A DNA stretch of 64,000 nucleotides from Mytilus californianus (taxonomy: Eukaryota): positions 4,278,001 to 4,342,000 of the forward strand of contig NW_026262690.1 in the NCBI RefSeq assembly GCF_021869535.1. The letters run 5' to 3'. The stretch's first letter is position 1, and the number at the start of each line of letters is the position of its first letter. This document shows positions 1 to 58,534 of this stretch, one piece after another. A program made the translations under genes and the position numbers. A model generated the notes under the pieces. That model ran no database searches. It saw only the letters and a program-made list of their open reading frames with translations, and had not been told where the DNA came from.

Positions 1-1139
1 AAGACCTTCAATGGTTCTCTGAACTATTGATTTTTAAATGTAATATGTTTTACTAACACTTGTCAATTGTTATTCCTTAGACACACACCTTTTACATTTT
101 TTACATGAGATGTTTCACATTTTTAAAATAATTTAAATGTCAAAAATAATATAATAATCTGTATTTCCCTTTATTATCTGAAAAGCAGACACTGTCGATA
201 CATCTATTTCAAAACACATCTTGATGATATTTTTACCTACAAAAAAGAGAATACAATTAGAATTAGTATAGTTGTAGTTAACTATAATAGATTTGAAGTG
301 TCGGCATTATTTCTCAAATAGCTAAAGTGGTTTTATGAAATAAAGATAAAAGCAAAATCCACAAACCTCGTTTATACCAAATAATACTTCCTTTTTTTAT
401 TTCATATAGATATATAGGCATATTTTTTACATTTAGATCACATCTCCTTTTATTCATACGTATACATGTTTTAATCAATTTATAATGTCTCTTTCCTTGT
501 TGCAAAAAGTTTAATTAATTTATTGTCCCAATCAACAAAAATTTTGAATGAAAATTACTGCAAGAATTTTATCTTCGAATGTTAAAGAGGACTCCAATGT
601 TTTTCACATGAGAGTATGACATTGCTTCTTCTGTCTAGTGTTGTTTTTTTAAGAACAATTTCCATAACCTTCCCTTTGAATTTTTTTATAAAATAGTCAA
701 TCAGATGCCTCTTTCTTTAAAAAAGATTTCTTTGATTTATCTATTCAGCATCAAAATGTAAAAAGAGTAACTAATGTTTACATTTTGTCAATTTAAGCAG
801 ATGGACGATGTGATGGTTCTTCTGAAAGAAAACTCAAAAACTCTCATACATTGCTTTATATACCTATTACTTGTGATCGGATGTTTTCATATAGCAATTT
901 ATTTCAATAAATCACATTTTCATTTTTAATTGCGTTATTAAAATTCACATTAAGTGTTAGTAGTAATGTCAAACTCTCTGTTAATAGAAGTAAGATAGTC
1001 ATATTTGGTTTGCATAATAATTGTAAGATAAACATGTTGTTCATCTGACTTTTACCTACTTTGCATGGTTGAATTGGTTTAATAATTAAGTCTAAAAAGT
1101 AGAATAATAAAAATTCCGAACATCAAGGGATATTATAAA

Positions 1140-1420
1140 TGAAAAGACCCTTAAAAGAGGGGCTAAAAATACCAGAGGAATAGTCAAACTCATAAATCGA
1201 AAATAAACTGACAACGCCATGGCTAAAAATAAAAAAGACAAACAGACAAATAATAGTACACAAGAAGCAACAACGAAAACTAAAGACTGAGCAACATGAA
1301 CCCCACCAAAAACTGGGGGTGATCTCAGGTGCTCCGGAAGGGAAAGTAGATCCTGTTCCACATGTGGCACCCGTCACGTGCTCATGTTATTACAAACCCG
1401 GTAAATAGTCTAATTCGGTA
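1140..1420 (-). repeat. Dispersed repeat, probable 3' tail of a non-LTR/Penelope-type retroelement (related pieces about 2310-2470, 37370-37530, 61380-61510)
   Basis: The same motif (ctcaggtgctccggaaggg...gatcctgttccacatgtggcacccgtc) recurs in degenerate form at 37455-37520. It generates the spurious ORFs 1092..1370, 1123..1377 and 37316..37558. Boundaries approximate. Confidence 0.6.
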
Positions 1421-2685
1421 GGTTACAATACAAATGGCAATATCAAAAGGTCAAACACATCAAACAAATGGTTAACAACTTTAATATTCCATACTTGGTA
1501 CAACATTTCCTTATGCAGAAAATGGCGGATTAAACCTAGTATAATAGCTAGCAAAACCTCTCATTTGTATGACAGTCGCGTAAAATTTCATAATATAAAA
1601 AAAACCATGTGTGAGCAAAACAAACAGTCATTATAGATAAACATGTCGAAAATTGGGCCGTGCTGTAGTCAAAACTGTGTTATTATCTTAATCACTATAA
1701 AAACATAAAACTATGTCAACAAATAAAAACAAAATGGTTTGTAGACACTCTAGTTACTTTAGTTGCAAAATGATACCAATTCATCTTTTACGATTGATGA
1801 ATGAGTTCGGCTCGGTTATTATACACTTTCAATCTTTTATTCTTAACCAGGATACATTCTATTTGACGGAAAGCTCTTTCAGATGCAAAACAGCTTAGTT
1901 TGATTCATTCAAAACATTCGATGCAAAACTACAAAACACATGTTAAATTTACAATCTTGTCATTAACAGTAGTTTGTATATCTGAATAACATTTTTCAAT
2001 TTATAGAAAGATGCAAAACTGTAGACTTATTGTTTTTTTTTAATATTGTTAAAACTCTTCGTTATCTAACTGTTTGTAGGTTTAACCGACTTTAAAATGT
2101 TTACCCTGTGAGTATAACATACAGAGGAAATATGTCCTACCTCTTTAATGCATTCGTTGCAATTTTTGCTTTGACTAGTATCATTTCTTCAGGAGAACCC
2201 AAACCAATGTTCGAAAAGCTTTTATGTATAAAGATGTTTTGAAAAATTCTAGCGCAACACAGTTTGCATAAATATTTAAATATTGATATTTTTTGTTCTC
2301 ATTTAATCAGCCTATGTGTGATCTCCCCGGATTTTGTAGGGTCTGTTTTGATCATTCTTTAGTTTTCGATATTGTGTTTATCTTTTCATAATTTTCTTTT
2401 TTTTTTTGGTCGTGTTTTTGTTTGTTTTTGACTTATGAATTTGAATATCCCTTTGGTATCATCTACCTCTATTCTCAACATATACTATCAATATAATATG
2501 TACCGTATCGACATTTTTACATCGAATAACATCTACATTTTTGGTGGATGCAAAATACAGACTTACAAATAATTTTGAAAAAATATCTACTATCAAGAAT
2601 GACAGTACTGCCTTACAAAACGTAAACCCGAGTTGTAAATTGCTATTGTTAATTTTACGTTATTTTTGCAATGTCTTACCTTATA

Positions 2686-2973
2686 TTAAATAATTATACA
2701 AGATGAACGTTTCTCATAGCCACAATAGCATCTCATATAAAGACGCTGATGCAAACGTCCATGACGCATTTCCTTTATAATGTAGGGTTGGCAAACACTT
2801 AGTGTGTGATAAAATTGCCGAACTGGTTTTCGGATTTTACAGTGACATTCAGTTTCATAGAAATAATAATCTAAAAACGTTATGCACTTGTATCTAATTG
2901 AACATACGTTGCTTTCATGATCGTAATCATCATAAATATCATCAAATTCAGTACACGTTTCATTGTTTGCCAT
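2686..2973 (-). CDS. Small Cys/His-rich protein, paralogue 1 (95 aa, short-linker type), ends in CaaX-like CIII
   Basis: ATG-stop ORF with H19-x4-C24-x18-C43-x-C45 and H56-x4-C61-x20-C82-x-C84. Shares PVRQFxH and CYCG with the ORF at 9760. Acceptor TTTGATTTTAG 3 nt before the ATG; donor AAG|GTAAGA 6 nt after the stop. Confidence 0.75.
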   Translation of the reverse strand: MANNETCTEFDDIYDDYDHESNVCSIRYKCITFLDYYFYETECHCKIRKPVRQFYHTLSVCQPYIIKEMRHGRLHQRLYMRCYCGYEKRSSCIII

Positions 2974-5059
2974 TTTCTAAAATCAAATATAATAATCTTA
3001 AAGTCATCAAAAGGGATCCGTTTCGATATATCCTGGTTAACTCTATGTTATGATAAGCTGTTACTGCTGTATGACTTTTATACAGACACATGACTTGTGT
3101 ATTTAAATATCTCCTCCTACTTAAGTTAAATTGATTCCGATGAAAAGTAAAGAATTGCAAACATGACTTGAAATTTTTTGGCATAGACTTTCATTTATAT
3201 CTTCAAATAATAATTCCTGGATGTTATAGAAGAACAATTTATTTTAAGAAGTCTACCCTCAACTACAATCATTAATATCAGAGAGTAAGATGTCATGAAT
3301 TCATATCAGCAGGTTAAGTACCTTGAGTTTATTTCGTTATACGCGAGCATGTTTTGATATGATATTGAGTTTTTATTTTGCTATCTATAAATCGATATAA
3401 AGAAATGATTTTTATGTACTGATTTTTTTACGTTCTTGTTTGGTATATTGCAGTGTCTGTTGTTATATCTTAATTGATATTAGTATCTAAAGAATCTGGT
3501 TGAAATAGCATCGATGCCGCGATTTTTGCTTTGATTTTTTGAATATTAAAAAGAATTCTAGTTTTTAAAGTTAACGTGTTATCGTTAGATTCTGTTCACT
3601 AGTTGTATTTTACTGAATGAGGCTTTCTGTTCAATTGTCTTATTTTTGTTCGAACAGTTCTTAATATCTCAAAATGATGACTTTTAACAAAGTTTCTTCT
3701 CCTTCCTTTGTCACATCTATACTCTATGTACTTAAAACATATCTGTACACATGACATTTGGATCTTTGCTATATATCATTCGATATTAATAAGTACACAC
3801 TATTCAGATATTTCAATTGACTCATTTCATGTCACAACCGCCTCATAAACATATATCATGGATCAATCGCGCCATTGCGTAATGAAATCTGCTCGAAATT
3901 TCCAAATGACAACTATCTAAAAATACCTTAATAATTTCCATTACAACCAGGAGGTGATACTACTGTTTTTTACGTTTTTAGAATTAAACAAAAGGCATAG
4001 AACTTTTTTTTGTGATATACAACTTGAATTTTTATGTTTTTTATCTAAATATATATTTTAAACAAACGTCCAGTGTAAAATCCAGGATTAAAATTGGGTA
4101 CACAAGATACGCGTTTTGTCTACAAAAAAACACATCAGTGACGCTCGAAGAAAAAAATGCAAAAAGGCAATCAAATGAAGAACAAAACTATAAACTACTG
4201 CCTTATAAGTGGGAGGTTCGTTTAGCTATGAAACCCAGTATGAACTACCATTTTATTCTAAAAAAGTCAGTTATTTTCCGTTTGTGTGGTTGACTCATGT
4301 AGTTCTAACGTCAGTTTATAAGGACTTCCAATTTTTTATTTAACGTTTGAGTTCGATATTCTTTTAATAGTATTTTCTACTGAAACATTATTTATAAATT
4401 TAATTGGCAAAGGATAGAAAAAAAAGATTCATAAATATCAATACTGGTTATTTTTTTTAACAGAAAGTAGATCATAGGTTCTGTACAATACTTCTGTAAT
4501 CTCTTCAAACCAAAAGCAGACAGAAATGAATAAGGCCAATGAACGGAATAAAAGCCATAGGTACAAAACAATCGTAAAAACCAAAATCTAGCAAAGCCAT
4601 TGTCCAATGGATGCTAGGTTTGAAAAAGAAGTAAAATAAACAGTACCAACTTGTTCCTGATTTTATATTATACACGTTCCATTATACATAGCTATAGTTA
4701 TAAAGGTAAATCATTACTATAACATGAATTAAGATAATTAAATATTCATGACATACAGCAAATCAAAAGTCACAGTTATAACAGAGATACTAAATGGAAC
4801 AAACCAAACGAAGCAAATGTCTACAATATTTCCGAAATAATTTATATTGTAAATTAAATGATTCCTTACTGTAAGTCATATTGACAGGTATTCCTTCTCC
4901 GATTAAATAATTAAATACAAATCATAAGTTGTTTCGTTGCAAAGAATCATCCGGTTGTATCAAGCAAAAAATTTACTTTAATACTTAGAAATGTATGTTC
5001 TCCATAAAATAATGAACAAAAAATATACTTGTATTTAAACACTTTTAAGGCTTTCTGAG

Positions 5060-5200
5060 TTATTTTGTATGATCATCTCTAGATCCTCTTGCATGTGTCT
5101 CCCTATACTTGTTTACTAGGAACCAGATAATAACGACCAATAATCCTACTCCTACTACGGGTATTCCTACAGCAAGGGCGATTATTCCTCCGGTAACCAT
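5060..5200 (-). CDS. Candidate 46-aa single-pass membrane microprotein MVTGGIIALAVGIPVVGVGLLVVIIWFLVNKYRETHARGSRDDHTK
   Basis: Hand-translated (below the ORF-track cutoff). Uninterrupted hydrophobic stretch of about 25 residues followed by basic residues (KYR), GC-richer than its flanks, upstream acceptor-like TTTATCTAACAG. Confidence 0.45.
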   Translation of the reverse strand: MVTGGIIALAVGIPVVGVGLLVVIIWFLVNKYRETHARGSRDDHTK

Positions 5201-6384
5201 TATAAAATATTCAATTTAAAAGAATAAACGGTTGTTATTCTGCGTTAACAATGCACTGTTAGATAAACATATCAAATTATATACTTCGTTGGTAACCTAT
5301 TGATTGGACTGTTTCATTGCAACCAGATAACAAATTTGTACAAATCATGAACAAACTAAGCCTATATAACTCATGGTTTTGGTAATATCTTTTTCTAAAA
5401 ATACATAAGCTTAGCGAAAAAAACAGAACAGGTGGTTAATTTTGTAAATTAATTTAGAGATTGTTAAGAACCTAGGTTCAAACTTCCTCAGGTAAATTAT
5501 TCCGTAGCTGTACTTACTCAACTTAAAGGGGTTTGTTTCCCATTAAGCTCCTCAAATGTTAATTTATGTATAGATATCTAGAGCTTACAATTTTAGGGTT
5601 TGGGCCTACCTGGTTAAGAGAATCCAGAAAAGCTCTAAGGATGCATCAAATTTATAAATTGTTATTTTTATGAAATATTTCGTCCTAAACATGCATGCAA
5701 TTTTTGCCACTAGGCGTTAAGCATCCAGCAATCAATCAATCATCTAAATATTAAATTGAATTTATATAGTTTTAACATTCAATTATCAAGTTAATATGGT
5801 TGTCTCCTTATCTTCTTAAAGATATATATGACACCACACACACACGGTCTAGTTAATACGATATTTAGTCTTTATTTTTTCTTCCAAAACTTGTTTTCAC
5901 AACGTTCACGTCAAAAAGGTAAAGCATTATGAAAAAAATCAAAAAAAAAAAAAAATTAAATCAGTGAGAGTCGTTAGATATATTTCTATTTTGTTTAGAC
6001 AGGTGAAAAGGATTTTATAAAATGAATTTACCGAAAAATTTGAGACTGTCCTTACTGTGGTGAATAGTTTTTATTTTTGACAATTCCGGTTAAACAGCTG
6101 ACCGAAAGAAGAAGTGTAGGTAGTCAACGTGTAATGTAAAAAGCCATATGTAAATTGTTCATTTCCTCAAGTTAGGAACCTTTCTTTTCGATTGTAGTTT
6201 ATAGTTATATATTAGTATTTTGTCCTTTATAGAATTTGATGTGTGTAACATAATTTTTTGTCGCTTATAAATTTTTTAATACTTATTTTAAATCGTTTAG
6301 TTAAAAAAATGTCTAAATCAACTAAGGTGAACTATACCTGATCTACGTATAGATATGTTAAAGGAAAATACCTAAAATTAAAAC

Positions 6385-6726
6385 TTACTTAGAGCTGGAC
6401 ATGTATTCCTGACGTGCATTGCAACTACATGTATTAGTAATTATAAATGCTTTATGCTGCCTATATTTACGAAAACAGTTAGCATGATGATGGATGAAAA
6501 CTCCGTCCTTATTCATATCCGAAATCTTCCGAAAATTAACATCTCTATTTGAGACATAGGAATATTGGTTGCAAAAGCAATGTCTAAGAAAGATATAGTA
6601 AGTCTGGTCATTTCTGATATAACATTTTCTTATCATTTTACACGTATTACTTAAGTGCTTTTCAAATACACTATCATCATCATTTTTGTATCCATAAAAC
6701 TCATCTATACTTATTGAACTGTGCAT
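6385..6726 (-). CDS. Small Cys/His-rich protein, paralogue 2 (113 aa from first ATG, long-linker type)
   Basis: H24-x4-C29-x20-C50-x-C52 and H79-x4-C84-x15-C100-x-C102; IDEF at residues 7-10 as in paralogue 4. The stop codon lies inside a donor-like AA|GTAAGT, so the C-terminus may continue in another exon. Confidence 0.7.
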   Translation of the reverse strand: MHSSISIDEFYGYKNDDDSVFEKHLSNTCKMIRKCYIRNDQTYYIFLRHCFCNQYSYVSNRDVNFRKISDMNKDGVFIHHHANCFRKYRQHKAFIITNTCSCNARQEYMSSSK

Positions 6727-8348
6727 ATCAAAATTTTGATTGTATTTCAAATTCGGTACTTTTAACTAATACTTTTATAAAAGGAAACATATGATTTATA
6801 TCTTCTCTATCATATAAATATATATCTGTTTTATATGTTTTATATTTAAATTCTGGAATTTCTTTTAAGTATTATTACACTCCCAATCGTTTTGTTACAC
6901 GTTTTTTCCTAGAGGTTCTGACGTGTTACGTAAATCAATACTTGTAATTTAGCGATGAATGTCAACGAAAGCTGAACTTTATTTGTTAAATCTTAACTCA
7001 TTTTTTAAGATACACTTCTTAGCCATCCGTCGCGCCGTCAATATTTAAACTGGGCTTTTATGTCTTTATTTAACGCTCTACTTCAATACACATTTTTATT
7101 AAAAAAAATATGTAACAAGTATCCATTCCTACTTTAATATATGTGTCGTCTCGTTTTCAGAATGTAGAAATGTCCGGAAAAATGTATTCATTTTGTTTTT
7201 ACTGAATTAATACTTCGTTTTGGGCAATGGTTAAATTTGAACCTCATGTCTTGTTTAGTTACCAATCTGATTATACGGTTATCTTTAATTATGCTGTACT
7301 TATTAGGACACCATAATTAAATTATCAAAGGTATCTATAGGTATGTCTTTGCTATGGGTGCGCGATACATCTCTTGTGGTTTAGCTTATAATGCTTGAAA
7401 AACATTGTTTTCATATGCAGGAAATTTTGACTCAAAATCAATAATACATCCAGTTATCCTCTAGCCTGCCAACCTATTTTTATCTTCTATTGATAAAACA
7501 TCATTTAAAACGGAGGACCTTACAGATGATCACATTGGTCATTTCTAAGATTTAAACACATTTTCTTAGTCAAAAAGTCACAAAACTTATCTTACAAACT
7601 ATGATCTTCCAACAGTGCAGTTTAAACGTGAATTAAAAAATCAAAACATATAATACATTGTGTACAATAACTTTAGCTTTCGTAAACATAGGATTTTCCA
7701 GACTCTATACCGCTTATCACAATATGGAAATTGAAATATGAGAATAATAGTTAAAACTGTATATATTGATAGAACTCACATCCAGGTCATGAAATTACAT
7801 AAAAGAGGGGCGAAAGATACCAGAGGAACAATTATAATAATTATAATACCAGCCAATATGTTGAAAAAATAAATAAGATGTCGTGGTATGATTGCAAAAG
7901 CGATAACTATCCTCGTAGACCAAATGACGTAGATATTTGACGATTTCGGTTTTAGTCGAAGATGTTTCAATATTAGGGTTCTCCAACGTATTATACTTTT
8001 GGCTTTCCAACTTTTTGTTTCATGTGTTCCTGATGCAGATGTTTCCTGAAAAATGTGTGAAATGACCTGGAAACATGCCAGAAATATTTGTTTTTTTTAT
8101 CATCTTACTTTTTAACTCACATTAGAAATTTTATGTATCTGGATTTACTTTCATAAGTAACGCTCGAAATCAAATAGTTGAAAGACAAAATGGAATATTC
8201 TGATGTTATGCATATATGGATTTCACATTTTGAGAACCTGACATAAAAAAAAGATAAACACCATTCATTTATTAAGCCGTAAATAGTGAACAAGATACAT
8301 TAACAGTTATGTTTTATACAACAGAAAGAGTTCATGTAATCATCTTAA

Positions 8349-9009
8349 ATGGGCACTAGCTGTCAAATTCATGTTCACTGATTTGACTTAAATTCCCATA
8401 TTTGATTTATAACCATGTAAAACATTTATCAAAATTATAAAAAATCTAAAATAAACAATTTACAGGGCACGGGCTTGATAATTTGTAGCTTCATGTTGTG
8501 TGTATTGTAGTTTTGGTGCCATCAAATTAACTATCGAGTTAACCTCCGAAGACCTCTGATGTCATATAAGCGATATAAACATAAATATAGATGTAAATAG
8601 AAAGCGAACTCGTGCAGTTAGATTTTTTTTCTAGGTCTGTTTAATTTCATATTATAGATTAAAAATATATGTTACTCATCGTTTTTACCTGTATAAGAAT
8701 GATTTTTTTTGTGGATCGAATCAGTCAATCAAATGATTTACCTTTGTTTCACTTTCAATGTTGACATTATTTTCCTTTAAATAACAGAACACGCACAAAT
8801 CATGCGTTATCAATCCCTAGCTAAGGGGTTAAATTGAGTTCACTTGCAAGTGAATAGTTCATCATCAATGTTTCTTAGCTTAATTTGACAAAATTGAACC
8901 ATACTGGCTGCTAAAAGCGAATTGTTATTTCACTATTTCACTTTCGTTAATGATTGAACAAAAAAAAATCGTACTTTTGATTTTTTTATATCTCGTAGCT
9001 AGTGCCCCT
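8349..9009. mobile_element. Non-autonomous Kolobok-like DNA transposon
   Basis: 13-bp TIRs ATGGGCACTAGCT / AGCTAGTGCCCCT (1 mismatch), flanked by TTAA at 8345-8348 and 9010-9013. TTAA TSD with purine-starting termini fits Kolobok rather than piggyBac. Confidence 0.7.
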
Positions 9010-9218
9010 TTAAGAATATAAATAGCTATTGTTAACAAACGAATTAGTTGATTTATACACTGCGGTATGGCAAATGTACTAATACTCAGTTTTTCGAAGG
9101 TAGAAAGACCATCAATTGTTTTAGTTTCCTATTATTATTTCTTGAATATCACAAAATCTTTATATCTTTTCATCTTCTAATAAACATATTTGTCTTTTTC
9201 TTTGTGGTACATCTTTCT

Positions 9219-9760
9219 TTAGTTGTCTGCAATGAAGAACAATAAATCTATATCTATCCATATAAAATTCGAATAAACTAAATCGCTGATGGTGTTTAAA
9301 AAAAATCTACGGTTCAAAAAACAGAACCATTTATTTAATGGTAGAATTTAAGGAGTTCAATGCAAATTTGAATATAGCATTGTATGCTAACTTTACAATT
9401 TCTAAATAATGTACTCCTATTTATATAATCTGTGCAAATCACAAAACGTTCAAACCAAAAACATGTCAACTTACCTAGTCTATTATATGATTTGTTAACA
9501 CTTCCACAATAGCATATCATCAGAAGATGTATAACTTTTCTACCGCGTTTATATCTGGATTCTTTATGTTCTCTACAATAAGGACCAACGTGGACAAATT
9601 GTCGAACTGGTCGCTGCAAGCTGCAGTAGCAATTTAACTCAAACAAGTAGGCACCGTCATATGTTGGGTGCCTACCTTTGTTCTTTATACAGCATGCCTC
9701 ATCCATATGATCTTCTGTATATTCATAGGTTTCTTGGGTATCAGTAAAATTAGAATCCAT
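9219..9760 (-). CDS. Small Cys/His-rich protein, paralogue 3 (short-linker type); predicted exons 9760-9475 and 9226-9219, 97 aa
   Basis: H18-x4-C23-x20-C44-x-C46 and H57-x4-C62-x20-C83-x-C85; clearly alignable to paralogue 1. Donor AG|GTAAGT at 9475/9474 and strong acceptor TTATTGTTCTTCATTGCAG ending at 9227 give ...NRLDN-stop, matching the length of paralogue 1. The second exon is inferred. Confidence 0.75.
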
Positions 9761-11956
9761 TGATTTCTATTTCTAGAAGTATTTGAAAATGAGCAAATTG
9801 CATTTGGTTTTGTTTCTTTGTAAAACCAAATCTATTATATATCCCGTTGTAACAAGATATAATCATGTTAAGTCTTCAGCTCCTCCTACTATTCAATTAT
9901 GTCGGCGCAGTCGAACAGCATAGAATTTTAAAACGTAATAGACCCACCATTTTTTCTTAAAATGTCCTGTATCAAGTCAGGAACATGGCTATTGTTATCT
10001 TGTAGTTCGTTTCTGTGTGTGTTGCATTTCAGGGTTTCTGTTGTGTCATGGTTCTCCTCTTATAGTTGATGTGTTTCCCTAAGTTTTAGTTTGTAACCCG
10101 GATTTGTTTTTTCTCAATCGATTTATGAATTTAGAACATTTTGATTATATACCATATCTTTGGTTACTAAAACATTTCTATTACTATGATTTTCTAAATT
10201 TATTGTAGTGGAATCAATTTTTTTTAAAAACAGAATAGGTAAGGGAATGAATCATTGTCACGGCTATTGAACAGTAACACATTAAAAAAATAAAACATTA
10301 AATATATGTGAGGCAGAACAAATGATCATTTTTTGTTTTAAGATAAACCTTTATTTCACAATATCACAGATCCGATGTTAGTACAAAATTTTAACGATAT
10401 GCTATATATGATATGAAATACTAAACACGTACGAAATGGTATATGCAGCTGTCAAATGTGATACAATATGGCTTTGTTCATGTGAACAAAATGGAAAGTT
10501 TAAGGTACGAAATTGTCATTTTGGGTACAAATAGCAATGGTACAAAATCACTAGCTTCCTTGGTATTTAAATTTTATCAAGATTCAATAGACATATACTC
10601 TTTACTACAATAATAACAGATTTTTTTCAATAAATACTTATTCTTTTAATTATAACAAATACAAATTAAAACGTCAATTGAAAACGTTGGTGTACTTTCG
10701 AAAAGTCTTTTAAAAATTTGTTCTTTTTTCCATCTTCACTTTGTAAATATCTGTAAAACTGTGCAACTATTGGTTCAACCATATTTTGAATACATTTTTT
10801 TAATCTAGATCACAGCCTTTAAATGTGCCGAAAGAAATCAAACTCCGGTTCAGTTGCAGATGAAGTAAATATTTTTTGGATGGTAACTCAGCTTCGTCTT
10901 GGCATTTGTCAACACAACATTCATTTTGAACTTTTTGTCACGCTTCTTCATTATACCTGTAAATATGAATAATAATTAGGAAAAGTGTATGTTATATTTG
11001 AAAATGCAAATAATTGTAAGTTAAAAGAGAGAGAAATTAACTAATTAGAAATCAATAATCATAAGTTCAATAAAAACATAAAGCGCCATGACTTAATTTA
11101 AAATGACTTTTGTAAATTGTAACTTGGATGGACAGTTGTCTCATTGGCACTCATACCACATCTTCCTATATCTATAAAACAAACAACAATAACAAAAATT
11201 TACACAGAAATATAATTTAAGAATAACAGTACTGTAGTTGATGATGATGCTACCGTCAATTGGCGATTTGACGGTCGCAAATGCAGTTTAACTGGCGACG
11301 CGTAGATCTTACGGTAACTTTTAGCCAATAAAGACAATTGTTGCATAAAAATTTCATTAGAATAAAGTTTTGACATATCGACAATCTTTTAAAAGAAGAT
11401 ATGAAAAAATACATGCGGCTAAAAATCTTTCATTCGACACTGGTCATTTGCTTCTCTCCTAAACCGTAATTAATTACTACTTCGTCATTGCAAAACATTT
11501 TTTAAGTTGACATATTAGTAATAAGAGTAACATCTAACCAAATGACGTTCTCATTTGAAAACAATAGTATTTACATGCGCAATAATCGGAAAGCGTATGT
11601 CATCTTATCAGTTTACAGTGTAATGAGATTGGTTTTCAACAGGTTTAACCCTTTATTTTCTTCAGCAAATACATGTACTAAGTTAGGAATACGATAATTG
11701 TTTCCCGTTAATTAAGCTGAACGTTCGGTTTTGTCAGTTTTTATGGACCATCTCTTTTTAATTTACTATGGAGTTTGATAATTTTGCCATACGTTTTTAA
11801 TCAAAAAGAAGCAATTACTGAATAATATGATAAAGCAGAAACAATCCTATTTTCAGTTCACTATTTTTTGTTATTCGCTATACATACAATGTTTTGTATT
11901 CTTGATACTGTAGTTGATATATAAGAAAAGAATAATATACCTTTTTACTTGTAGCA

Positions 11957-12286
11957 TTATCTTGAATATGAGTATGATTCATCTCTACAATAACAACGTC
12001 GCAAAAATTTCAGCTTGAAAGGTGATACTTTCTTCGTATCGTATGTACAGTGTTTTCCGATAATGTGTAGGTCTATGCTTTCACCTAGATAAGTTGATCC
12101 TTGTTCCTTAAACTCTTTATGAACGTTTCTCTTTTTCAAACCGCATTGACATACCATAAAAATAGCAATAACTTTGTATTTGTCATTCACGATGCCAATT
12201 TCTGTTTTTATTTGACAATCTAAGCCATGTGTTTCTATATCCATATTGTCACTGGTAAACTCGTCAATATTGGTTGGATTCGACAT
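11957..12286 (-). CDS. Small Cys/His-rich protein, paralogue 4 (109 aa, long-linker type)
   Basis: H20-x3-C24-x21-C46-x-C48 and H74-x5-C80-x17-C98-x-C100; IDEF at residues 7-10. Upstream acceptor AACTTTCAG at about 12337; donor-like AAG|GTATAT shortly after the stop. Confidence 0.7.
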   Translation of the reverse strand: MSNPTNIDEFTSDNMDIETHGLDCQIKTEIGIVNDKYKVIAIFMVCQCGLKKRNVHKEFKEQGSTYLGESIDLHIIGKHCTYDTKKVSPFKLKFLRRCYCRDESYSYSR

Positions 12287-13095
12287 ATTAATATTTAAAA
12301 ATGTAGAACGGATTGTAAAGCATTGATTGATAAGACTGAAAGTTGCATGTTAAATAAGAAGAAATGTACAGTTTCATTGGATGTTATTAATACATTTCAT
12401 GAAATTCCAGAATCCGTTTAAAGAACCTCAAATTTTGTCTGGTATGTGGGAATTATTCGCAGACTATAGATGACACAACAAATTTATAAATAAGAATTAC
12501 CTTAGTTTGATTAAATAATGGCAATTGAATGATGAAATAACAGGAAAAAGGGACACCATGCAATAACTGTATCACGAAATTGTGTTGTCAAGTTACCTGA
12601 GCGTGTTAGTATGAAGCCTTTTACTATCTCTTTTATGTCGGTTCATATGTGTGTGTGATACAAGGCAGAACCAAACCCATGTAATGCTTTATAATAACCA
12701 TCATCGATAAATGTTAATCATATATTTCGTCAAAAAACATGTAGATATTAATTAACTTAATAACTTAATTCATCTTTAACCCCAACCCGTCCCCAAAAAG
12801 AATTACTCCGGATCCGGATACTATTGAAAGGTACATATAATTACTAAATCCTATGTAATTTAAGTTAACATGTTAAACAACATTCATTCAAAACATACTA
12901 CTAGTTTATGTTTCAAACCTGACATTTAAACATGTGAATATATGTATGTGTAAGTGTATAAATTATTTTTTGTATATATAAGAATACAAATAATATGGCT
13001 GTGTTTAAATATCTAAATCAATTGCAGTCACGTCAAAATAAACTAAGAAGAATTTCCTTTACCTGAACTATTTTTAACTATGTTATTTGTAGGCA

Positions 13096-14288
13096 ATGAA
13101 GAGGAAATTTCTACCAGGGAGTGACGTGTTTGTCAATAATAACTGTAAAATGGCGAATGCTAGAGATCCTGTAAAAAAGAAATGTGATATAGATGATAAT
13201 ATAACATCACATGGCGCCTCTAAAGTTGTTGCAGTAGAATTAAATAAGAAACTACCAAAAGCGAAGGAAAACGAACAGGACTCTATGCCGTCTGATGGTA
13301 AGTTAAAATATAATTCGTCGTTGTATTGTAATACTCTAAAGTCGTTTGCACCATGAATGAAAAAGTGATTTTATTTTCATCTTTCTTAATTCGTATGCAT
13401 AAATCATAAAATTTTGGATTTTTTATCAATAAAATATTTGAAGATATAAAGTATTAATGTTCAAAATCAATGCAAAAATTCTATCGATGGAACTTCCTTG
13501 AAGACCAATCGGTGTAAACAGTAAACAACTGCACATTGTATTGTCATGTCAAACACCTAGGGAAAAAAATATTTTTACGTAATATTGATATCGGCAGGAA
13601 AATAAAACAAGAAAATAAAAATGATAACAAATTAATCTAAAAAGGCAAACGATATAAAAGTAGTAGTCAATAGCAGCCTAATTGGCATGATAATGAAACA
13701 TCAACCTCTTATATGGAATATGTTGGGATTTGTAACCGTAAAAAAAATGATTAAGTACGACTACAAGACCAGCGTGAAAATAGTAAATAAAATACAAAAA
13801 CAAAAACAAAAGCATAAGATTTAGTACATCAATTTTAAAATTCTATATTGTCGTCATTTAACTATATATATTTATATTTCGTGTGATATACACTTTTTCT
13901 TCCTTGTCTGGCTATCTGTTCCTGTTAACCTTTACTGCATTCTACCAATAATCTTTATGTTCACATCAGTGATGATCGCAAGTGCTTTATAACATATACA
14001 TAAGTCATCATCTTAGTCCAGGCTGAAATCTGGAAAAAAAGTCACAAACCAGAAGAGGACAGACTAATGATGGACAAACTGAGTTTATCAAATGCTATCA
14101 GCAGCATAAATGTTCTATAACAGCCAACCAAATTAAATTTAAAAACCAAATGTGTCACTGTTAATACAGGGTTTCATTTGATTTCAGATGAGGATGGTTA
14201 TCCAGATTTACATCTTGATCCTGATGTTATAGCTCAACGGAAGAGAGACAAAAACAAAAAAGAAAATATTGAGATGTCGAACAGTTAA
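13096..14288 (+). CDS. Two-exon 100-aa hydrophilic, charged protein of unknown function (exons 13096-13297, 14188-14288)
   Basis: Acceptor TTATTTGTAG ending at 13092, ATG at 13096, donor ATG|GTAAGT at 13297/13298 (phase 1), acceptor TTTGATTTCAG ending at 14187. The phase-compatible second exon reads DEDGYPDLHLDPDVIAQRKRDKNKKENIEMSNS-stop. Confidence 0.6.
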
Positions 14289-14698
14289 ACAAACAGAATG
14301 ACTAAAGACTGTAAAGAACTTTTATGCAAATCTTAATACCGCAGTTATTATATTGAAACTGAATAGATACGTTGTTCAATTGAATCTGAAAACAGCGTTT
14401 AGACGTTTTATCATTGAAATGACCTTCGTGGTAACTATATAAAACTTTTTATGTACATTATAGATGTATGAAAACTTGCCTTAAATATGTTAGCATATGC
14501 ATTTTTTATTGTATCCAATGAGACATGAAACATGTATATATTACGAAATTTGTTCATTTTGTGGTTTTTGTATTACCATATCATAACACATTCACGTGTC
14601 TAAACCAAGACCTTGTGTGCGCAAGTTCAAATATCATCTATTGATTTTGTATTGAAATTTAAAGGACTAAATTACAGCATGTATGAATGTATGATTTA

Positions 14699-15821
14699 GG
14701 CCGTGTTCACATTGATCTAAACTCGGTGTTGTGTTTGTGTAATTCACACGTAAACTAAACACACTTACGTTCCCATTGATACAACTCAATGTTTACATGT
14801 AGTTTATATCATGTTTTGTCTACATGCAGTCGATAGTCAATGTAGGCCTTGTGTGGGTCAAGTGTACACAAAACAAGGTATTAAGAACATGAATTCTACC
14901 ATGTATATTTAAAGAAGAAACGTTTTTTGAATAAAATTGATATTTATCACAATTATTAATAAAGTTCTTTACTGAATTGATTGTCTAAACTCAATATATT
15001 GCTTTGTTATAAAAAAAACTAAAGGTAGCTTTATCAAGACTCAAAGCATCATCATCACCTTTGTCAAGACTCAAAGCATCATCATCACCTTTGTCAAGAC
15101 TCAAAGCATCATCATTGCCAAACTCATAATTCATTTGAAAATGTCTTCCCGAATCGACTGGACGTACACAGAAATATTTGCCACTGGTCTTTACTCAATC
15201 AACGATTCACTCATAAATACATTACTAAAAAGAGTGTGCGGTAAATTGTATCGTTTGGTTAGTAACTCAGATCCGGTAAAATGCACTTAGAAATAAAAAA
15301 AAAAGCATTAATTTGTAATGTACGTAACGATCTGTTATTTTTTAGCCAAAGTTTTTTTTTCGCGACCAAATTTATTAAGTTTTTAAAGCAATCAATCAAT
15401 TTTTTTTTCTTCAAAATTTAACACTATAAGGTATGGGGGAAATCTGCATTCAGAATATTTTTTTTTTATCATCTGCTTGACCAGAATATTTTTTTTTTTA
15501 AGTTAAATGGTTGTTCTCTAAGCACGTTGCTGCGGCCTACGTTTTTTATTGGGTAATCGAGACATCTTTAGTATCTTAAAAGTACTGCAAATCATCGAAA
15601 TGGCTTTCATAGCTGCTAGAAAAGTTTCCAAGAAATTTGAATTCGATTCTATGTAATGAGCATTTAAATGACATATAGTTTACAAGTGTGAACAAATCTC
15701 ATGTACAGGTAATTAAACCAGGTGTATAGATGTGAACAAATTTAATGTGAAACCAGTGTACATTACATTAAACTAAATGTAAACATGTTTACTGTACATG
15801 ACGTTTGGTGTGAACACGGCC
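14699..15821. mobile_element. Non-autonomous PIF/Harbinger-like element
   Basis: Perfect 13-bp TIRs GGCCGTGTTCACA / TGTGAACACGGCC, TTA target duplication at 14696-14698 and 15822-15824, subterminal TGTGAACA repeats. Confidence 0.75.
15034..15115. repeat. 30-bp tandem repeat, 2.7 copies
   Basis: Unit TCAAGACTCAAAGCATCATCATCACCTTTG, read directly. Confidence 0.95.
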
Positions 15822-16211
15822 TTAGACTAGTTTTATTGATTACAAATAAAATTTTGTACAAGAGTATTTTTCTTAATTAAAATTTCACTAGAAACATACT
15901 TTTCAAAGCAATATTTATTCCATCATCTGAAGTTTTATGATTATGGAAATAGAACGATAAGAAACTACTAACAACAGAAGAAGTAACTATGCATATATTT
16001 TATTCAGGTTATATGTATATAAATCTATATATAGCCCGAATAAGAAACTAATTGTCCGCTGTTTCATTTAAATGAGAAATTGAAAACGCATTGTCAATTC
16101 TAAAATTGGTTTACTTGTCATTTTTAAATCTGATGATAATTTGTAAATTTAACGGTCGAAATTCTCGCGGGGAACAAAACGAAGCAAATAACATTAACTG
16201 TACCATGTTTT

Positions 16212-16255
16212 GCACCAGATTCGCATTTCGATATTAAACGTCTCTTCAGTGATGC
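16212..16255 (-). ncRNA. Type I minimal hammerhead ribozyme motif, near intact
   Basis: Minus strand: GCATCA-CUGAAGA-GAC(gtttaat)ATC-GAAA-U(GCGA)A-UC/-UGGUGC. Stem I has 6 bp, the core is conserved, stem II has one mismatch. Confidence 0.65.
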
Positions 16256-17558
16256 TCAGGTCAAAATACTTGAAAATCCAAAGCTTATTAAAAACATCCG
16301 AAAGGTAAAAAAAATAGTATAGACACAGTCAGGCTAGTAATCAGAGAACTGATCAAAATTGAACAGGAAGTTAATATTCTTGTTGTTGCGTTACATTCTT
16401 TGGTTAAAAAATATTTGAAAGAGACAATTTATAAATGTTATACATAAGGAAGCACTTCCTTCGTACACTTTGTAATAGTAATTCAACAAAAGAAAAATTT
16501 TACCGATGCTGATCTAAGTAATGTGTTCACTATCAAACTATTAAACCATATGCAAATTTCGACAAATACTAAATTACAAATTATCTATTAAACTCAACCG
16601 TCAAACGTCAAATCGTTTGGGAATCTAACATAGTAGTCGATTCAAGATTTAAAACACTGTCAAAAATTTATTATTATTATTATTATTCTAATATTTTTCT
16701 AATAATTTTCCTCTCCCAAATTAACTGTTCGTGTTTAAAGATCGAAATTTTAGATAAATAGATGACAATGTTCTATTTATTTTATGTGAATACAAACATT
16801 TTAAACTTTTGAATCTTTTGAAACTTATTTGTATTTCACTATAAAATCATCTACATGATTGTACAAACAAACATAATGCACAAACAAAATATAAGAGATT
16901 TTCCAAATCGAATTTTCCTTGGAGTTCGGTATTTTTATTATTTCACTTTTAAATCAACCAACATTAATGAACTTATATGAAACATTCACTAATATAAAGA
17001 TACATTTTGAACTGTTCATATATCAAATAAAATTCAAATGAGTGAAAGAGTAACTTCCCTTGAAATGTAGACTTCCGGTAAATTAGAGTTACCGTACTTG
17101 CAATAAGCGTATCAAAGAGCCTGTAAATCAGCGTTAGGGAAAGCCGCTCATTTTGAAAAAGAATGAGACAGTCGAACAAAAACAATTGAAATAGTATTTG
17201 AATATGATATAAAGCTTCCCGATAGCGATTGCCATTCGACGTTTTCGCAGTTCCACCAATGGATAAGCTAAACAATGTAATTAAATGCCGAAACACGGCG
17301 ATTGAGGCGATAGATCCGAATTGTCACAATGTAATTTAAACATAAAACAGATAATCAGGTTGCGGACAACCTTTCAAATAGGTAATAGTTCCCAAAAAGA
17401 GTAACTAATCCTCAAATGAGGGATATCTCTCTTTTATTAACGGAACTTTTTTTCTAGTGCTCTGTTTATACTTGAAATGACACACAACGGGAGGGTTGAG
17501 ATCTAAAAAAAACCAACATGTTTAACCCTGCTGCATTTTTGAGCATGTCCCAAGTCAG

Positions 17559-18024
17559 GGGTAACACGAATGACCGAATAACACCGTTATTATCCAAATA
17601 ACACTTGTAATGACCGAATAACACTTGAAATTTTAATATTAGCACATATTGGTGACTTTTAAACATTGATTATTAAATAATATTATATTATAAGTGTATT
17701 TTATAACTTAAAAATGATTAACAGAAAGCAGGTAACTTCATAAAGATCGTTTTAAATTTAGTGTGCACATCCAACATGGCGACCATTGTGATTTCCTTGG
17801 TCGCCATGTTGGATGTACACACTATATTTAAAATAATCTTTATGAACTTACCTACTTTCTGTAAATTATTTTTAAGTTATAAAATACATTAATAATATAC
17901 TATTATTTTTTAATCAATATTTAAAAGTCACCAATATGTGCTAATATTAAAATTTTAAGTGTTATTCGGTCATTACAAGTGTTATTCTGATAATAACGGT
18001 GTTATTCGGTAATTCTAGGTACCG
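17559..18024. mobile_element. 466-bp fully palindromic (foldback) MITE, Mutator/MULE-like
   Basis: Arms are symmetric about a 12-nt loop (17786-17797) out to both ends; 9-bp TSD CCAAGTCAG at 17550-17558 and 18025-18033. It interrupts another dispersed repeat (about 17505-18275). Confidence 0.8.
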
Positions 18025-52610: not shown

Positions 52611-53043
52611 ATTAATCTTAGGATACATTAAGAGACCCCCCCTTATACTGGCATCCACCCTAGGCCACACAGCACCCGATGACATATGTAGATATCATAA
52701 GATGCAATGTAAAGGAGCATATATCAATGCCAGGACACAGCATTACTTCTTCTTTGCCTCCCTGCCAACACTTGATATATCTTAAACTTATACATCAAGG
52801 TTGGATACACCACACCGGTAACCGGCATGGATACAGTGGCCAAGCAGAACATAAAGTAATGGTGAAATAATATATAAATGTCAACAAAGACAGGTTTGGG
52901 AAAAACTAACCACAGTTTATTAAGCATAGTTAAAATTTCAAATAAGGCAAGAAATATACAATACATGTACAAATGTATATGCATGATAAACAAAATTTTA
53001 AAACATGAATAACTGAAAGTGTAAGTCAAACTGTGGTTCTCCA
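52611..53043 (-). repeat. Split direct repeat B2 (433 bp)
   Basis: Matches 53509-53940 with 9 substitutions and 1 indel by manual alignment. Confidence 0.95.
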
Positions 53044-53142
53044 CAGTAATATAAAATCACTGCGGACAAAATTCTAAAACTACAATAATGCACATAGAGT
53101 CAAAACGCACAAAACTAGAAAATAAGGGAGTGGTGGGTGGGA

Positions 53143-53508
53143 AAAGAAATACGATTATGCTTGATCGATTTGACATACAACTTGCTTGCTGCTTGCAAAA
53201 TTTTTGAATGTTGCGAGATGCTGGGATGCATACTGTGCAAGATAAATTTGATTGAATTTATTGGATTAGGTTAAACCGGGAAATATGAAAAATCAAAGCT
53301 GATTGGTAGATAAATATATCCCAGACAAAGCAAGATTCAAATAGGACAATCCGATTGGCTGTTGTCCGTAACCAGCCAAAACAAACGTGAAAAGGGGGTG
53401 CAGGGTTTTATAAAAAATAGCAATCAAATAATACGAAACTAAAGAATGTACAAATGCTTCTACAATACATGTATCTATATTAATACTGTATATTCAAAAA
53501 ATACTTCC
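53143..53508 (-). repeat. Split direct repeat A2 (366 bp)
   Basis: Matches 58535-58900 with 5 substitutions by manual alignment. Confidence 0.95.
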
Positions 53509-53940
53509 ATTAATCTTAGGATACATTAAGAGACCCCCCTTATACAGGCATCCACCCTAGGCCACACATCGCCCGATGACATATGTAGATATCATAAGAT
53601 GCAATGTAAAGGAGCATATATCAATGCCAGGACACAGCATTACTGCTTCTTTGCCTCCCTGCCAACACTTGATGTATCTTAAACTTATACATCAAGGATG
53701 GATACACCACACCGGTAACCGGCATGGATACAGTGGCCAAGCAGAACATAAAGTAATGGTGAAATAATATATAAATGTAAACAAAGACAGGTTTGGGGAA
53801 AACTAACCACAATTTATTAAGCATAGTTAAAATTTCAAATAAGGCAAGAAATATACAATACATGTACAAATGTATATGCATGATAAACAAAATTTTAAAA
53901 CATGAATAACTGAAAGTGTAAGTCAAACTGTGGTTCTCCA
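53509..53940 (-). repeat. Split direct repeat B1 (432 bp), abutting A2
   Basis: Junction AAATACTTCC|ATTAATCTTAGG joins the element's two termini. Confidence 0.95.
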
Positions 53941-54393
53941 ATTAAAGTATCCCAAACCTGTAGTAGGGGTAGGAGAAGAATAACCTAAAATTGGATTCAA
54001 AAATGAAAGCAAAAAACTAAAATTATAAATAGGTAAAAACCAAATAAAACAATGCTCAATAACACACAAGAGTACATGTATAATAAATTGTATTTGAAGT
54101 AGTCTGATCTGTACCATACAAAATCACAGTCTGTATAAACGGTCCCAACACAAGTACATATAAGTCCAACACAAGAATCCATGAATTCAGTAGATATGAA
54201 AGTCACAACTTAATATGTACATTGTAGGTGTCCATTTCAACCATACATGTACCATATCAGATTAGCAGAATAGTAATAATAAAACTTCCGTGCATGGCAA
54301 GACCCGTATGAATGCTATCTGAAGTTATTATTATAAGCAACATTAAAAAGAACACACATAATGATATTATATATACATGTACAAAACAAAAAA

Positions 54394-58127: not shown

Positions 58128-58534
58128 TTGTGACTTTTATATCGTTCATATTTAGTCTGTAGTAATCTTTAAATAATTGCGTGATGCTCGCAAAACGTTA
58201 AATTGTCAACAACTTCTCTGGCTGGAACAAGCGGAACAAACGGCCTCAATTTCTTCGCAGAAAATACATCCTTCAAAACAGGCTGAACAGTCCAATTTAA
58301 TCATGAAGATCACTTTGCTTAAATCGGCCTCAGATTCGGTTATATACGCACTGTATCTGTAAACCTCTTCAAAGCTCAACACATACCATGACGGTAAACG
58401 AAGAAAGTTAGACACAACTTTAGAAAAGAAGACGTGATCCAAATATTGATCATTAGTATCCTTTAAACTTAATTTAGCTTAACGTTTGTGTAACAATTGT
58501 CTCTAAAATGCCTTACTAATCGGCAATCAAAAAT

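What the first reader, a model, noticed from the sequence alone, without database searches (positions are those of the whole stretch)
2686..12286. Tandem cluster of four small genes encoding an unrecognised double H-x4-C-x(15-21)-CxC module
Seen in sequence: four same-strand ORFs (95, 113, about 97 and 109 aa) spaced 2.5-3.7 kb apart, each with an acidic N-terminus and exactly two repeats of H-x(3-5)-C-x(15-21)-C-x-C, alternating hydrophobic (beta-strand-like) residues between C and CxC, and no signal peptide. The DNA is too diverged to align by eye, yet all eight putative ligands persist, which implies protein-level selection. Established: the spacing does not match the C2H2, CCHC, CCCH, RING, LITAF, CSL or SWIM consensus as I know them, and known bivalve Cys-rich peptide families are secreted. 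Inference: a cytosolic or nuclear two-metal (Zn) beta-hairpin domain family, possibly lineage-specific, fast-evolving, or of viral or transposon origin.
Basis: partly seen in the sequence, partly recalled or inferred. Interest (0 to 1): 0.85.

Follow-up and report, generated by a model that had tools for sequence, protein, structure and literature searches.

The report
Mussel-only double His-Cys3 small protein family
Four neighbouring mussel genes are real, transcribed and spliced. They encode a previously undescribed family of ~100-residue proteins without a secretion signal, built from two copies of a His+3Cys motif that most likely holds two zinc ions in an all-beta fold matching no known domain.

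Summary
Four minus-strand genes (o1-o4; proteins of 95, 113, 97 and 109 aa) each carry H-x(3-5)-C-x(15-21)-C-x-C twice. This double motif occurs exactly four times in the 64 kb window and never in shuffles.

- **Transcription:** RNA-derived contigs cover the genes. GT..AG introns sit at or just after the stop codon in o3 and o4, an exon boundary at the stop in o2, and a matching donor is predicted in o1.
- **Conservation:** all four are intact at the syntenic locus of Mytilus galloprovincialis, where only two are annotated, as "hypothetical" proteins.
- **Family:** an exhaustive profile search of 1.84 billion proteins found only 87-139 aa relatives. More divergent ones lie in similar tandem clusters on contigs with no DNA similarity to Mytilus. 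Across 21 representatives the only (near-)invariant residues are the eight putative ligands and one C-terminal Ser.
- **Repeat and fold:** the two halves are homologous (hhalign E 5e-7). AlphaFold gives a six-stranded all-beta model (pLDDT 80). Nothing convincing turned up in Pfam, PDB, BFVD or the ESM Atlas.
- **Selection:** dN/dS is 0.19-1.44, yet the open frames and ligands are kept far beyond neutral expectation.
- **Location:** no signal peptide and often an odd Cys count favour intracellular Zn(His)(Cys)3 sites, but metal binding and function are untested.
- **Origin:** viral or transposon origin has no support.

The parts
2686..2973 (-). o1: complete CDS, 95 aa. Putative ligands H19 C24 C43 C45 / H56 C61 C82 C84.
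   Evidence: ORF. Orthologues are intact in M. galloprovincialis (76% aa) and in L001/L002 (74%, 61%). RNA-like runs of three studies hold 0.43-0.84 of the sampled words of 2600-3100. A GTAAGA donor is predicted 6 nt after the stop; this was not checked with reads.
3075..3120 (-). o1 promoter: GTAGGAGGAG motif (3111-3120) and TATAAAAG box (3075-3082).
   Evidence: The motif lies 138-147 nt upstream of the ATG and is shared with o3. It is kept in L001, L002 and the M. galloprovincialis o3 orthologue. Six matches at <=1 mismatch in the window against 0.89 expected.
6385..6726 (-). o2: complete CDS, 113 aa, long-linker subtype. H24 C29 C50 C52 / H80-82 C85 C101 C103.
   Evidence: ORF. A 430-nt contig of X8 covers 6385-6788 and then continues elsewhere, so an exon boundary lies at the stop codon. 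An organism-B contig covers it at ~90% identity. The M. galloprovincialis orthologue is 73% identical and intact.
9475..9795 (-). o3 exon 1: 5' UTR from about 9795, ATG at 9760, codons 1-95 plus the first base of codon 96.
   Evidence: X8 contig record 19 joins 9795..9475 to 9226..8984 with no mismatches. GTAAGT donor at 9474. TATATAAT box at 9834-9841 and GTAGGAGGAG at 9880-9889.
9227..9474 (-). o3 intron (248 nt, GT..AG). The 141-aa ORF of the raw sequence reads into it by accident.
   Evidence: The same stretch carries stop codons in M. galloprovincialis.
8984..9226 (-). o3 exon 2: last two codons (D, N), stop TAA at 9219-9221, then 3' UTR.
   Evidence: The annotated orthologue P0003 is 97 aa.
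11941..12286 (-). o4 CDS (109 aa, stop at 11957-11959) plus 16 nt of 3' UTR up to the splice donor.
   Evidence: ORF. Spliced contigs of X8, X14 and X18 join about 11936/11941 to 10951/10956. The donor AAG|GTATAT lies 16 nt after the stop. Orthologue P0004 = VDH89555.1, 87% identical.
10957..11940 (-). o4 intron in the 3' UTR (984 nt, GT..AG on the minus strand); it contains an interspersed repeat.
   Evidence: The joint 'skips 984, CT..AC (cut +5)' is seen in three runs. Depth is very high at 10940-11339.
10329..10956 (-). o4 exon 2 (3' UTR).
   Evidence: X8 record 21 and X14 record 6.

Best explanation
The locus is a tandem array of four old paralogues of a mussel-restricted gene family. Each gene has a short TATA-box promoter, one exon holding essentially the whole CDS, and an intron at or just after the stop codon (read-supported for o3 and o4, an exon boundary for o2, predicted for o1).

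The products are proteins of about 95-113 residues with no leader peptide. They consist of an acidic N-terminal strand followed by a basic body made of an internally duplicated unit: strand a, His, x3-5, Cys, strand b, turn, strand c, Cys-x-Cys.

Most likely mechanism (inferred). In each half, the His at the end of strand a, the Cys that opens strand b and the CxC that closes strand c come together at the base of the b-c hairpin and bind one structural Zn2+ as Zn(His)(Cys)3. The two zinc-clasped three-stranded halves pack into a small pseudo-symmetric beta-sandwich. The scaffold is held constant while the hairpin tips (often Arg/Lys-rich), the inter-repeat linker and the acidic tail change fast. 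The proteins would therefore act as intracellular binding modules for a protein or nucleic-acid partner, and the array diversifies by birth-and-death evolution.

Shown here: the genes, their transcription and splicing, their conservation, the internal repeat, the ligand invariance, the lack of a leader and the lack of known relatives. Inferred: metal binding, the fold details, the location and the binding role.
For: - **Genes are real and expressed.** Spliced GT..AG contigs come from runs of two studies of the window's own species and one of a relative. Runs of three studies hold o1.
- **Orthologues.** The locus is colinear with M. galloprovincialis UYJE01000047.1 at 80-88% DNA identity, with all four genes intact there.
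- **Constraint.** None of the 32 ligand positions changed between the two species, while 18% of all residues did. Under simulated neutral change of o1, an open frame with all eight ligands kept has P = 0.009 at 34 substitutions and 0.0001 at 68.
- **Family.** There were 12 hits among 1.84e9 representatives, all 87-139 aa, and more from word-based searches. Tandem clusters also occur on unrelated contigs L003, L004 and L009.
- **Alignment of 21 members.** C24, C45, H56 and C84 are invariant. H19, C43, C61, C82 and S90 are kept in at least 90%. The same picture holds in 55 sequences.
- **Internal duplication.** hhalign of half 1 against half 2 gives probability 92.6% and E 4.7e-7, with H..C..CxC in register.
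- **Fold.** The AlphaFold model has pLDDT 79.8 and pTM 0.66. Its strands are 10-19, 25-31, 37-42, 51-56, 62-70 and 73-82, which places each ligand set at strand ends around a hairpin base.
- **Intracellular and zinc rather than disulfide.** There is no hydrophobic leader, and in-frame stops lie upstream of the ATG. The transcripts of o2 and o3 start less than 70 nt upstream. The His residues are as conserved as the Cys. Total Cys counts are often odd (6-9).
Against:
- The AlphaFold alignment is shallow (21 sequences).
- Six conserved Cys could in principle form three disulfides.
- Several short-linker members keep an N-x-T sequon near the N-terminus, which would make more sense in a secreted protein.
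- dN/dS of o1, o2 and o4 is about 0.7-1.4, so constraint outside the ligands is weak.
- Three family members each lack one ligand (P0034, P0031, P0050).
- Tissue, cellular location and partner are unknown.
- The one confirmed RNA raw-read run shows almost no reads on the genes.
Confidence: 0.6

Rival explanations
1. These are leaderless but exported, disulfide-bonded effector peptides, such as antimicrobial or toxin-like peptides. They would resemble the many hypervariable Cys-rich peptide families of mussels, with the six conserved Cys forming three disulfides.
For: The genes are small, tandemly arrayed and fast-evolving, with an invariant Cys framework. That is the pattern of mussel peptide families such as MgCRP-I (abstract of PMC4558851, listed). 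An N-x-T sequon sits near the N-terminus of many short-linker members. By cross-strand register in the AlphaFold model (inference), the single Cys and the first Cys of CxC would be neighbours.
Against: No member has a signal peptide or any hydrophobic N-terminus, and the start codons are well defined. Two His are as conserved as the Cys, which disulfides do not explain. Total Cys numbers are often odd. Pfam models for defensin-like or knottin-like families gave nothing, with a best score of gamma-thionin E 3.5 in 1 of 21 members.
Confidence: 0.13
2. The 3Cys+1His sets bind iron-sulfur clusters or another redox-active metal, as in the NEET/CDGSH proteins, rather than structural zinc. The proteins would then be small redox or cluster-transfer factors.
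For: The ligand set is exactly 3 Cys + 1 His per half and includes a CxC pair. From established knowledge, that is the composition of the NEET [2Fe-2S] site. In the long-linker members a D-G-x-x-I-H element precedes the second His.
Against: There was no Pfam zf-CDGSH hit in 21 members at E<=10. The spacing differs: CDGSH is C-x-C-x8-C-x3-H, and here it is H-x4-C-x15-21-C-x-C. The predicted fold is a beta-sandwich, and NEET proteins did not appear in the top 50 structural hits.
Confidence: 0.08
3. This is a very diverged offshoot of a known cytosolic beta-sandwich family, such as the alpha-crystallin domain of small heat-shock proteins or the CS/p23 domain, that later acquired Cys/His clasps.
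Confidence: 0.05
4. These are chance or decaying ORFs within transcribed non-coding RNA, and no functional protein is made.
For: dN/dS is near 1 for o1, o2 and o4. There is no proteomic evidence. Expression in the one confirmed RNA raw-read run is almost nil.
Against: The motif occurs four times against 0 in shuffles. The frames stay open in 3-4 taxa, with only in-frame indels. Neutral simulation gives P = 0.009 to 0.0001. o3 has dN/dS 0.19. The eight ligands are kept across paralogues that have lost all DNA similarity.
Confidence: 0.02

Closest known systems
LIM-type double zinc finger (and similar sequential two-zinc modules)
   Same: Two consecutive metal sites, each built from a ligand pair, a beta-hairpin of about 15-23 residues, and a second ligand pair. 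It is Cys-rich with one His per site, intracellular and a binding scaffold. This comparison rests on knowledge of the LIM consensus C-x2-C-x16-23-H-x2-C-x2-C-x2-C-x16-21-C-x2-C/H/D.
   Different: The ligand pairs here are H-x(3-5)-C and C-x-C, not CxxC/HxxC knuckles. Each unit is about 40 residues with three strands. The two units are predicted to pack into one sandwich. No Pfam LIM hit appeared at E<=10 in 21 members.
Mussel hypervariable Cys-rich peptide families (MgCRP-I, mytilins, myticins, mytimycins)
   Same: They are restricted to mussels, small and tandemly arrayed, with fast-evolving sequence around an invariant Cys framework.
   Different: Those families are secreted pre-pro-peptides with disulfides (abstract of PMC4558851). 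This family has no signal peptide, has conserved His, often has an odd Cys count, and has a different gene structure, with the whole CDS in exon 1.
NEET / CDGSH 3Cys-1His metal sites
   Same: The same ligand composition (3 Cys + 1 His), including a CxC pair.
   Different: The order and spacing of the ligands differ, there is no sequence match, and the predicted fold is different.
Alpha-crystallin / CS (HSP20-like) beta-sandwich
   Same: It is the best, though weak, structural resemblance: a compact cytosolic beta-sandwich of about 80-90 residues.

Membership tests
Any Pfam-A family (including LIM, zf-CDGSH, HSP20, CS, IL17, defensin/knottin-type, C2H2, CCHC, RING, LITAF, CSL, SWIM) | Sequence match to the family HMM at or near its gathering score | tested here: not met
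   hmmscan of the 4 window proteins and of 21 family members at E<=10 gave only WSC (E 3.1) and gamma-thionin (E 3.5), each in one member.
Any protein with a solved structure | Profile-to-sequence match, or a fold match clearly above background | tested here: not met
   The best BFVD Foldseek hit had E 0.31. An IMG/VR scan with one member found no relative, but that scan reaches only close relatives. The profile could not be used, because it has no conserved 7-10-mer.
Secreted Cys-rich peptides of bivalves | N-terminal signal peptide | tested here: not met
   The maximum 12-residue hydropathy in the first 35 residues is at most 1.15 in 14 diverse members, and the N-termini are acidic. In-frame stops lie upstream and the 5' UTRs are short. 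No dedicated signal-peptide predictor was available.
Structural zinc-binding domains (general class) | Four conserved Cys/His ligands per site that are clustered in space and bind Zn2+ | tested here: inconclusive
   Conservation of the 2 x (1 His + 3 Cys) set is met. Metal binding cannot be tested with these tools.
Cystine-knot growth factor / IL-17-like fold | Signal peptide, C..CxC knot on paired long hairpins, and a structural match | tested here: not met
   There is no leader, no Pfam IL17, TGF-beta or NGF hit, and no cystine-knot protein among the top 50 structural hits.

The most novel reading that the evidence does not exclude
A new structural-zinc fold: a pseudo-symmetric six-stranded beta-sandwich made by duplication of a three-stranded unit, with each half clasped by a His-x4-Cys...Cys-x-Cys site. 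It would be unrelated to any described zinc finger, would have arisen within mytilid mussels, and would be kept as a tandem array whose exposed loops are under diversifying selection. That would make it an intracellular recognition module in some host-parasite, host-transposon or reproductive conflict.
Probability: 0.3. Interest if true: 0.75.

Novelty: new variant of a known kind. Interest (0 to 1): 0.55.

Why it matters
If the two His-Cys3 sites do bind zinc, this is a new ligand signature and probably a new small beta fold to add to the catalogue of zinc-binding modules. It was found in an animal lineage known for inventing fast-evolving gene families.

It also gives a clean natural experiment. 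The scaffold residues are frozen over paralogues that have lost all DNA similarity, while the surfaces change at or above the neutral rate.

For mussel genomics, two of the four genes (o1 and o2) are not annotated in the M. galloprovincialis assembly, and the other two are labelled only 'hypothetical'. The family is therefore invisible to current functional analyses.

On the other side, function, tissue and metal are all unknown, and lineage-specific small-protein families are common in bivalves.

Tried and rejected
- **Pfam:** the 4 window proteins and 21 family members gave nothing.
- **PDB sequence profile:** nothing at E<=10.
- **ESM Atlas by features:** no usable hit for o1 or P0017.
- **First AlphaFold run** with 6 sequences was poor (pLDDT 59). 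Only the 21-sequence run was usable.
- **IL-17 or cystine-knot idea** (C...CxC) was considered early and dropped: no leader, no Pfam hit and no fold hit.
- **Viral or transposon origin** was rejected (introns, synteny, single-copy read depth, no viral match).
- **The search for related loci** with the family alignment failed because no conserved 7-10-mer exists. Single-protein scans of the JGI metagenome contigs (P0050, P0052) and of IMG/VR (P0017) found nothing.
- **Naming the other taxa:** literature searches for the accessions (VDH89555/6, SRR, ERZ and Ga numbers) and for a description of such a family in Mytilus found nothing. The non-Mytilus taxa therefore remain unnamed.
- **Earlier notes of this scan** hold nothing on this family.
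- **The bacterial-type promoter scan** is irrelevant for a eukaryote.
Full report

Yes. The ORF listing shows four minus-strand ORFs at 2686-2973, 6385-6750 (ATG at 6726), 9335-9760 and 11957-12286. A six-frame scan for H-x(2-6)-C-x(14-22)-C-x-C, a linker, then H-x(0-6)-C-x(14-22)-C-x-C finds exactly these four places. It finds none in 30 shuffles of the window. The single unit occurs 12 times against 0.27 expected.

At the DNA level the four gene units share nothing detectable. As proteins, only o1 and o3 are significantly alike (E 5e-10). The window has about 30% G+C throughout.

**2. Are they genes?**

Laying public runs on 6340-12330 showed contigs that skip introns with GT..AG ends on the minus strand.

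- **o3:** 9795..9475 is joined to 9226..8984. The donor is GTAAGT.
- **o4:** about 11941 is joined to about 10956, in three runs (X8, X14, X18).
- **o2:** contigs of two species stop aligning exactly at 6385, the last base of the stop codon, and continue elsewhere.

The runs labelled 'RNA?' are therefore RNA-derived. The gene model is one exon holding the 5' UTR and essentially the whole CDS, then an intron at or just after the stop codon, then a 3' UTR exon. o1 has a matching GTAAGA donor 6 nt after its stop. That donor was not checked with reads.

For o3 the splice gives a 97-aa protein ending ...SYNRLDN. The 141-aa ORF in the raw sequence is an accidental read-through into the intron, and the same stretch carries stop codons in M. 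galloprovincialis.

In-frame stops lie just upstream of every ATG, and TATA boxes lie about 50-110 nt upstream of o1, o2 and o3. The o2 and o3 contigs end 62 and 35 nt upstream of the ATG. No hidden signal-peptide exon is therefore indicated for those two genes.

o1 was outside the laid stretch. RNA-like runs from three studies hold 0.43-0.84 of the sampled words of 2600-3100, while other runs of the same study hold none. This suggests restricted expression.

The only confirmed RNA raw-read run (X21, about 6% of it read) has almost no reads on the genes. The few reads on o2 have the orientation expected for a minus-strand RNA in a standard stranded library.

**3. Relatives**

A word-based search with o1 found two proteins, at 74% and 61% identity. 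Their contigs, L001 and L002, are genomic and colinear with window 2432-4140 at 88% and 83-86% DNA identity.

An exhaustive profile search of 1.84 billion cluster representatives found 12 proteins, all 87-139 aa. The module was therefore not detected inside any larger protein. Two hits are M. galloprovincialis 'hypothetical predicted proteins', VDH89556.1 and VDH89555.1.

Their contig, locus L007, is colinear with window 196-18000 at 80-88% identity. It carries intact orthologues of all four genes, at 76%, 73%, about 91% and 87% aa identity. Only two of them are annotated there.

Two further word-based searches raised the family to about 40 clusters, none with a functional name.

More divergent members sit in the same kind of same-strand tandem array on contigs that share no DNA, not even repeats, with the window.

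- L003 carries five members within 20 kb; a sixth called gene running off the locus end was not examined.
- L004 carries two.
- L009 carries three within 2.85 kb.

A maximum-likelihood tree puts the L009 107-aa gene with o4 and the long-linker genes of other taxa with o2. The paralogue lineages in the window therefore predate those species splits. I could not name the other taxa. That they are other mytilid mussels is only a guess.

**4. What is conserved?**

In an alignment of 21 representatives with mean column identity 30%, the invariant columns are C24, C45, H56 and C84 (o1 numbering). The columns kept in at least 90% are H19, C43, C61, C82 and S90.

The 55-sequence alignment gives the consensus E-x-H-x-s-x2-C ... 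f-v-r-x-C-x-C ... (d-g-x2-)i-H-x4-C ... y ... C-x-C-x4-e-x2-S-y. Three members each lack one ligand (P0034, P0031, P0050).

Splitting the alignment in two and comparing the halves with hhalign gives probability 92.6% and E 4.7e-7. His, Cys and CxC align in register. The protein is therefore an internal duplication.

**5. Selection**

| Comparison | dN/dS |
|---|---|
| o1, window vs M. galloprovincialis | 1.06 |
| o2, window vs M. galloprovincialis | 0.73 |
| o3, window vs M. galloprovincialis | 0.19 |
| o4, window vs M. galloprovincialis | 1.44 |
| Four genes pooled | 0.69 |
| o1 vs L001 / L002 | 1.07-1.21 |

None of the 32 ligand residues differs between the two species, although 18% of all residues do. 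Indels are in frame.

I simulated neutral substitution of the o1 CDS.

| Substitutions | P(no stop) | P(8 ligands kept) | P(both) |
|---|---|---|---|
| 34 | 0.116 | 0.068 | 0.009 |
| 68 | 0.023 | 0.003 | 0.0001 |

Even the copies with dN/dS near 1 are therefore not drifting. It follows, as inference, that the non-scaffold positions evolve at or above the neutral rate. It is not met.

**6. Fold and known families**

Pfam gives nothing at E<=10 for the four proteins or for 21 members. A family profile finds no PDB sequence at E<=10.

AlphaFold with six sequences was poor (pLDDT 59). With 21 sequences it gave pLDDT 79.8 and pTM 0.66, with about 90 in the core. The model has six strands: 10-19, 25-31, 37-42, 51-56, 62-70 and 73-82.

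Read against the alignment, each half is strand a ending in His, a five-residue loop, then Cys opening strand b, a turn, and strand c closed by CxC. By hairpin register, C24 faces C43 and C61 faces C82, with C45 and C84 on the same face two residues on.

| Fold search | Best result |
|---|---|
| Foldseek, PDB | E 0.9 |
| Foldseek, BFVD | E 0.31 |
| ESM Atlas | unrelated bacterial clusters, TM 0.37-0.54 |

**7. Where, and which metal?**

No member has a hydrophobic N-terminus. The first ~18 residues carry net charge -3 to -7 and the rest +3 to +16. Total Cys counts are 6-9 and often odd.

No leader, odd Cys counts and two His conserved as strictly as the Cys together favour a reduced intracellular protein with two Zn(His)(Cys)3 sites over a disulfide-bonded secreted peptide.

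A 3Cys-1His iron-sulfur site of the NEET type is a minority alternative. The ligand order and spacing differ from CDGSH, and no Pfam hit supports it.

One point runs the other way. Many short-linker members keep an N-x-T sequon in their first ten residues.

**8. Origin**

- The genes have spliceosomal introns.
- They are syntenic between species.
- They show ordinary depth (about 5-70), while the interspersed repeats between them reach depths of thousands to over a hundred thousand.
- They have no viral structural or sequence relatives.

**9. Verdict**

The protein-family reading is supported. Zinc binding and the function remain inferred.

This is a real, expressed family known only as 'hypothetical', with a new His-Cys3 x 2 signature and no recognisable relatives. 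I file it as a new variant of the general kind 'small structural-metal domain'. There is a fair chance (about 0.3) that it is a truly new zinc fold under diversifying selection.

Noticed in passing
window 13096-13356 (+): An 86-aa plus-strand ORF (MKRKFLPGSD...) is 90.6% identical and intact in M. galloprovincialis, with no Pfam match. The M. galloprovincialis annotation has a 147-aa gene on this strand spanning the whole 20.5 kb locus, so the four-gene array may lie inside an intron of an opposite-strand host gene. The 2164-nt X8 contig that holds o4 runs 1129 nt beyond 12330 and would cover this ORF. This is either a long o4 5' UTR or a merger of overlapping antisense transcripts; it was not resolved.
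   Followed up: partly
window 3111-3120 and 9880-9889 (-): A shared GTAGGAGGAG element lies 120-147 nt upstream of the start codons of o1 and o3, about 30-40 nt upstream of their TATA boxes. It is conserved in L001, L002 and the M. galloprovincialis o3 orthologue. The DNA similarity between o1 and its extra paralogue on L008 begins within a few bases of this motif. It is a candidate cis-regulatory element of the o1/o3 subfamily.
   Followed up: partly
window 7740-7939, 8340-9139, 9940-10139, 10940-11339: Interspersed repeats between the genes reach read and contig depths of thousands to over 150,000 in RNA-derived runs of two species, with many rearranged joints. They are probably abundant transcribed MITE- or SINE-like elements. 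One overlaps the o3 3' UTR exon and one lies in the o4 intron.
   Followed up: no
window 52611-58900: A retrotransposon with a reverse-transcriptase ORF (55751-56971), an RNase H-like ORF (55377-55850), a tyrosine-recombinase-like ORF (54394-55329) and duplicated 106-aa ORFs at 52724-53044 and 53621-53941. The same first-stage scan noted it as a Ngaro-type YR element (s1-345156).
   Followed up: no
window 62623-63045 (+): A 140-aa ORF matching Pfam zf-RVT (zinc-binding region of reverse transcriptases) at E 4.7e-6, just at the gathering score. It looks like a non-LTR retrotransposon remnant.
   Followed up: no
window 6538-6721 (o2 CDS): The transcript contig of the same species (X8) differs from the reference at four CDS positions, three of them non-synonymous: H2Q, K14E and T28K. 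The last two match the M. galloprovincialis state. This points to high amino-acid polymorphism within the species.
   Followed up: partly
L003 12473-13219 and L004 17192-18271: In the unnamed other taxon, a long tandem repeat (13-residue period ISISETRRDTKLD when translated, open in several frames) sits inside the family's gene cluster. It is probably a satellite, not a gene.
   Followed up: no
L008 3492-3803 (same run as L001): The taxon that carries the o1 orthologue on L001 also has an extra o1-like paralogue (P0006, 103 aa, 41% identical to o1, about 64% DNA identity including the promoter). No fifth copy was found in the window or in the 20.5-kb M. galloprovincialis stretch L007. Copy number therefore differs between close relatives.
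   Followed up: partly
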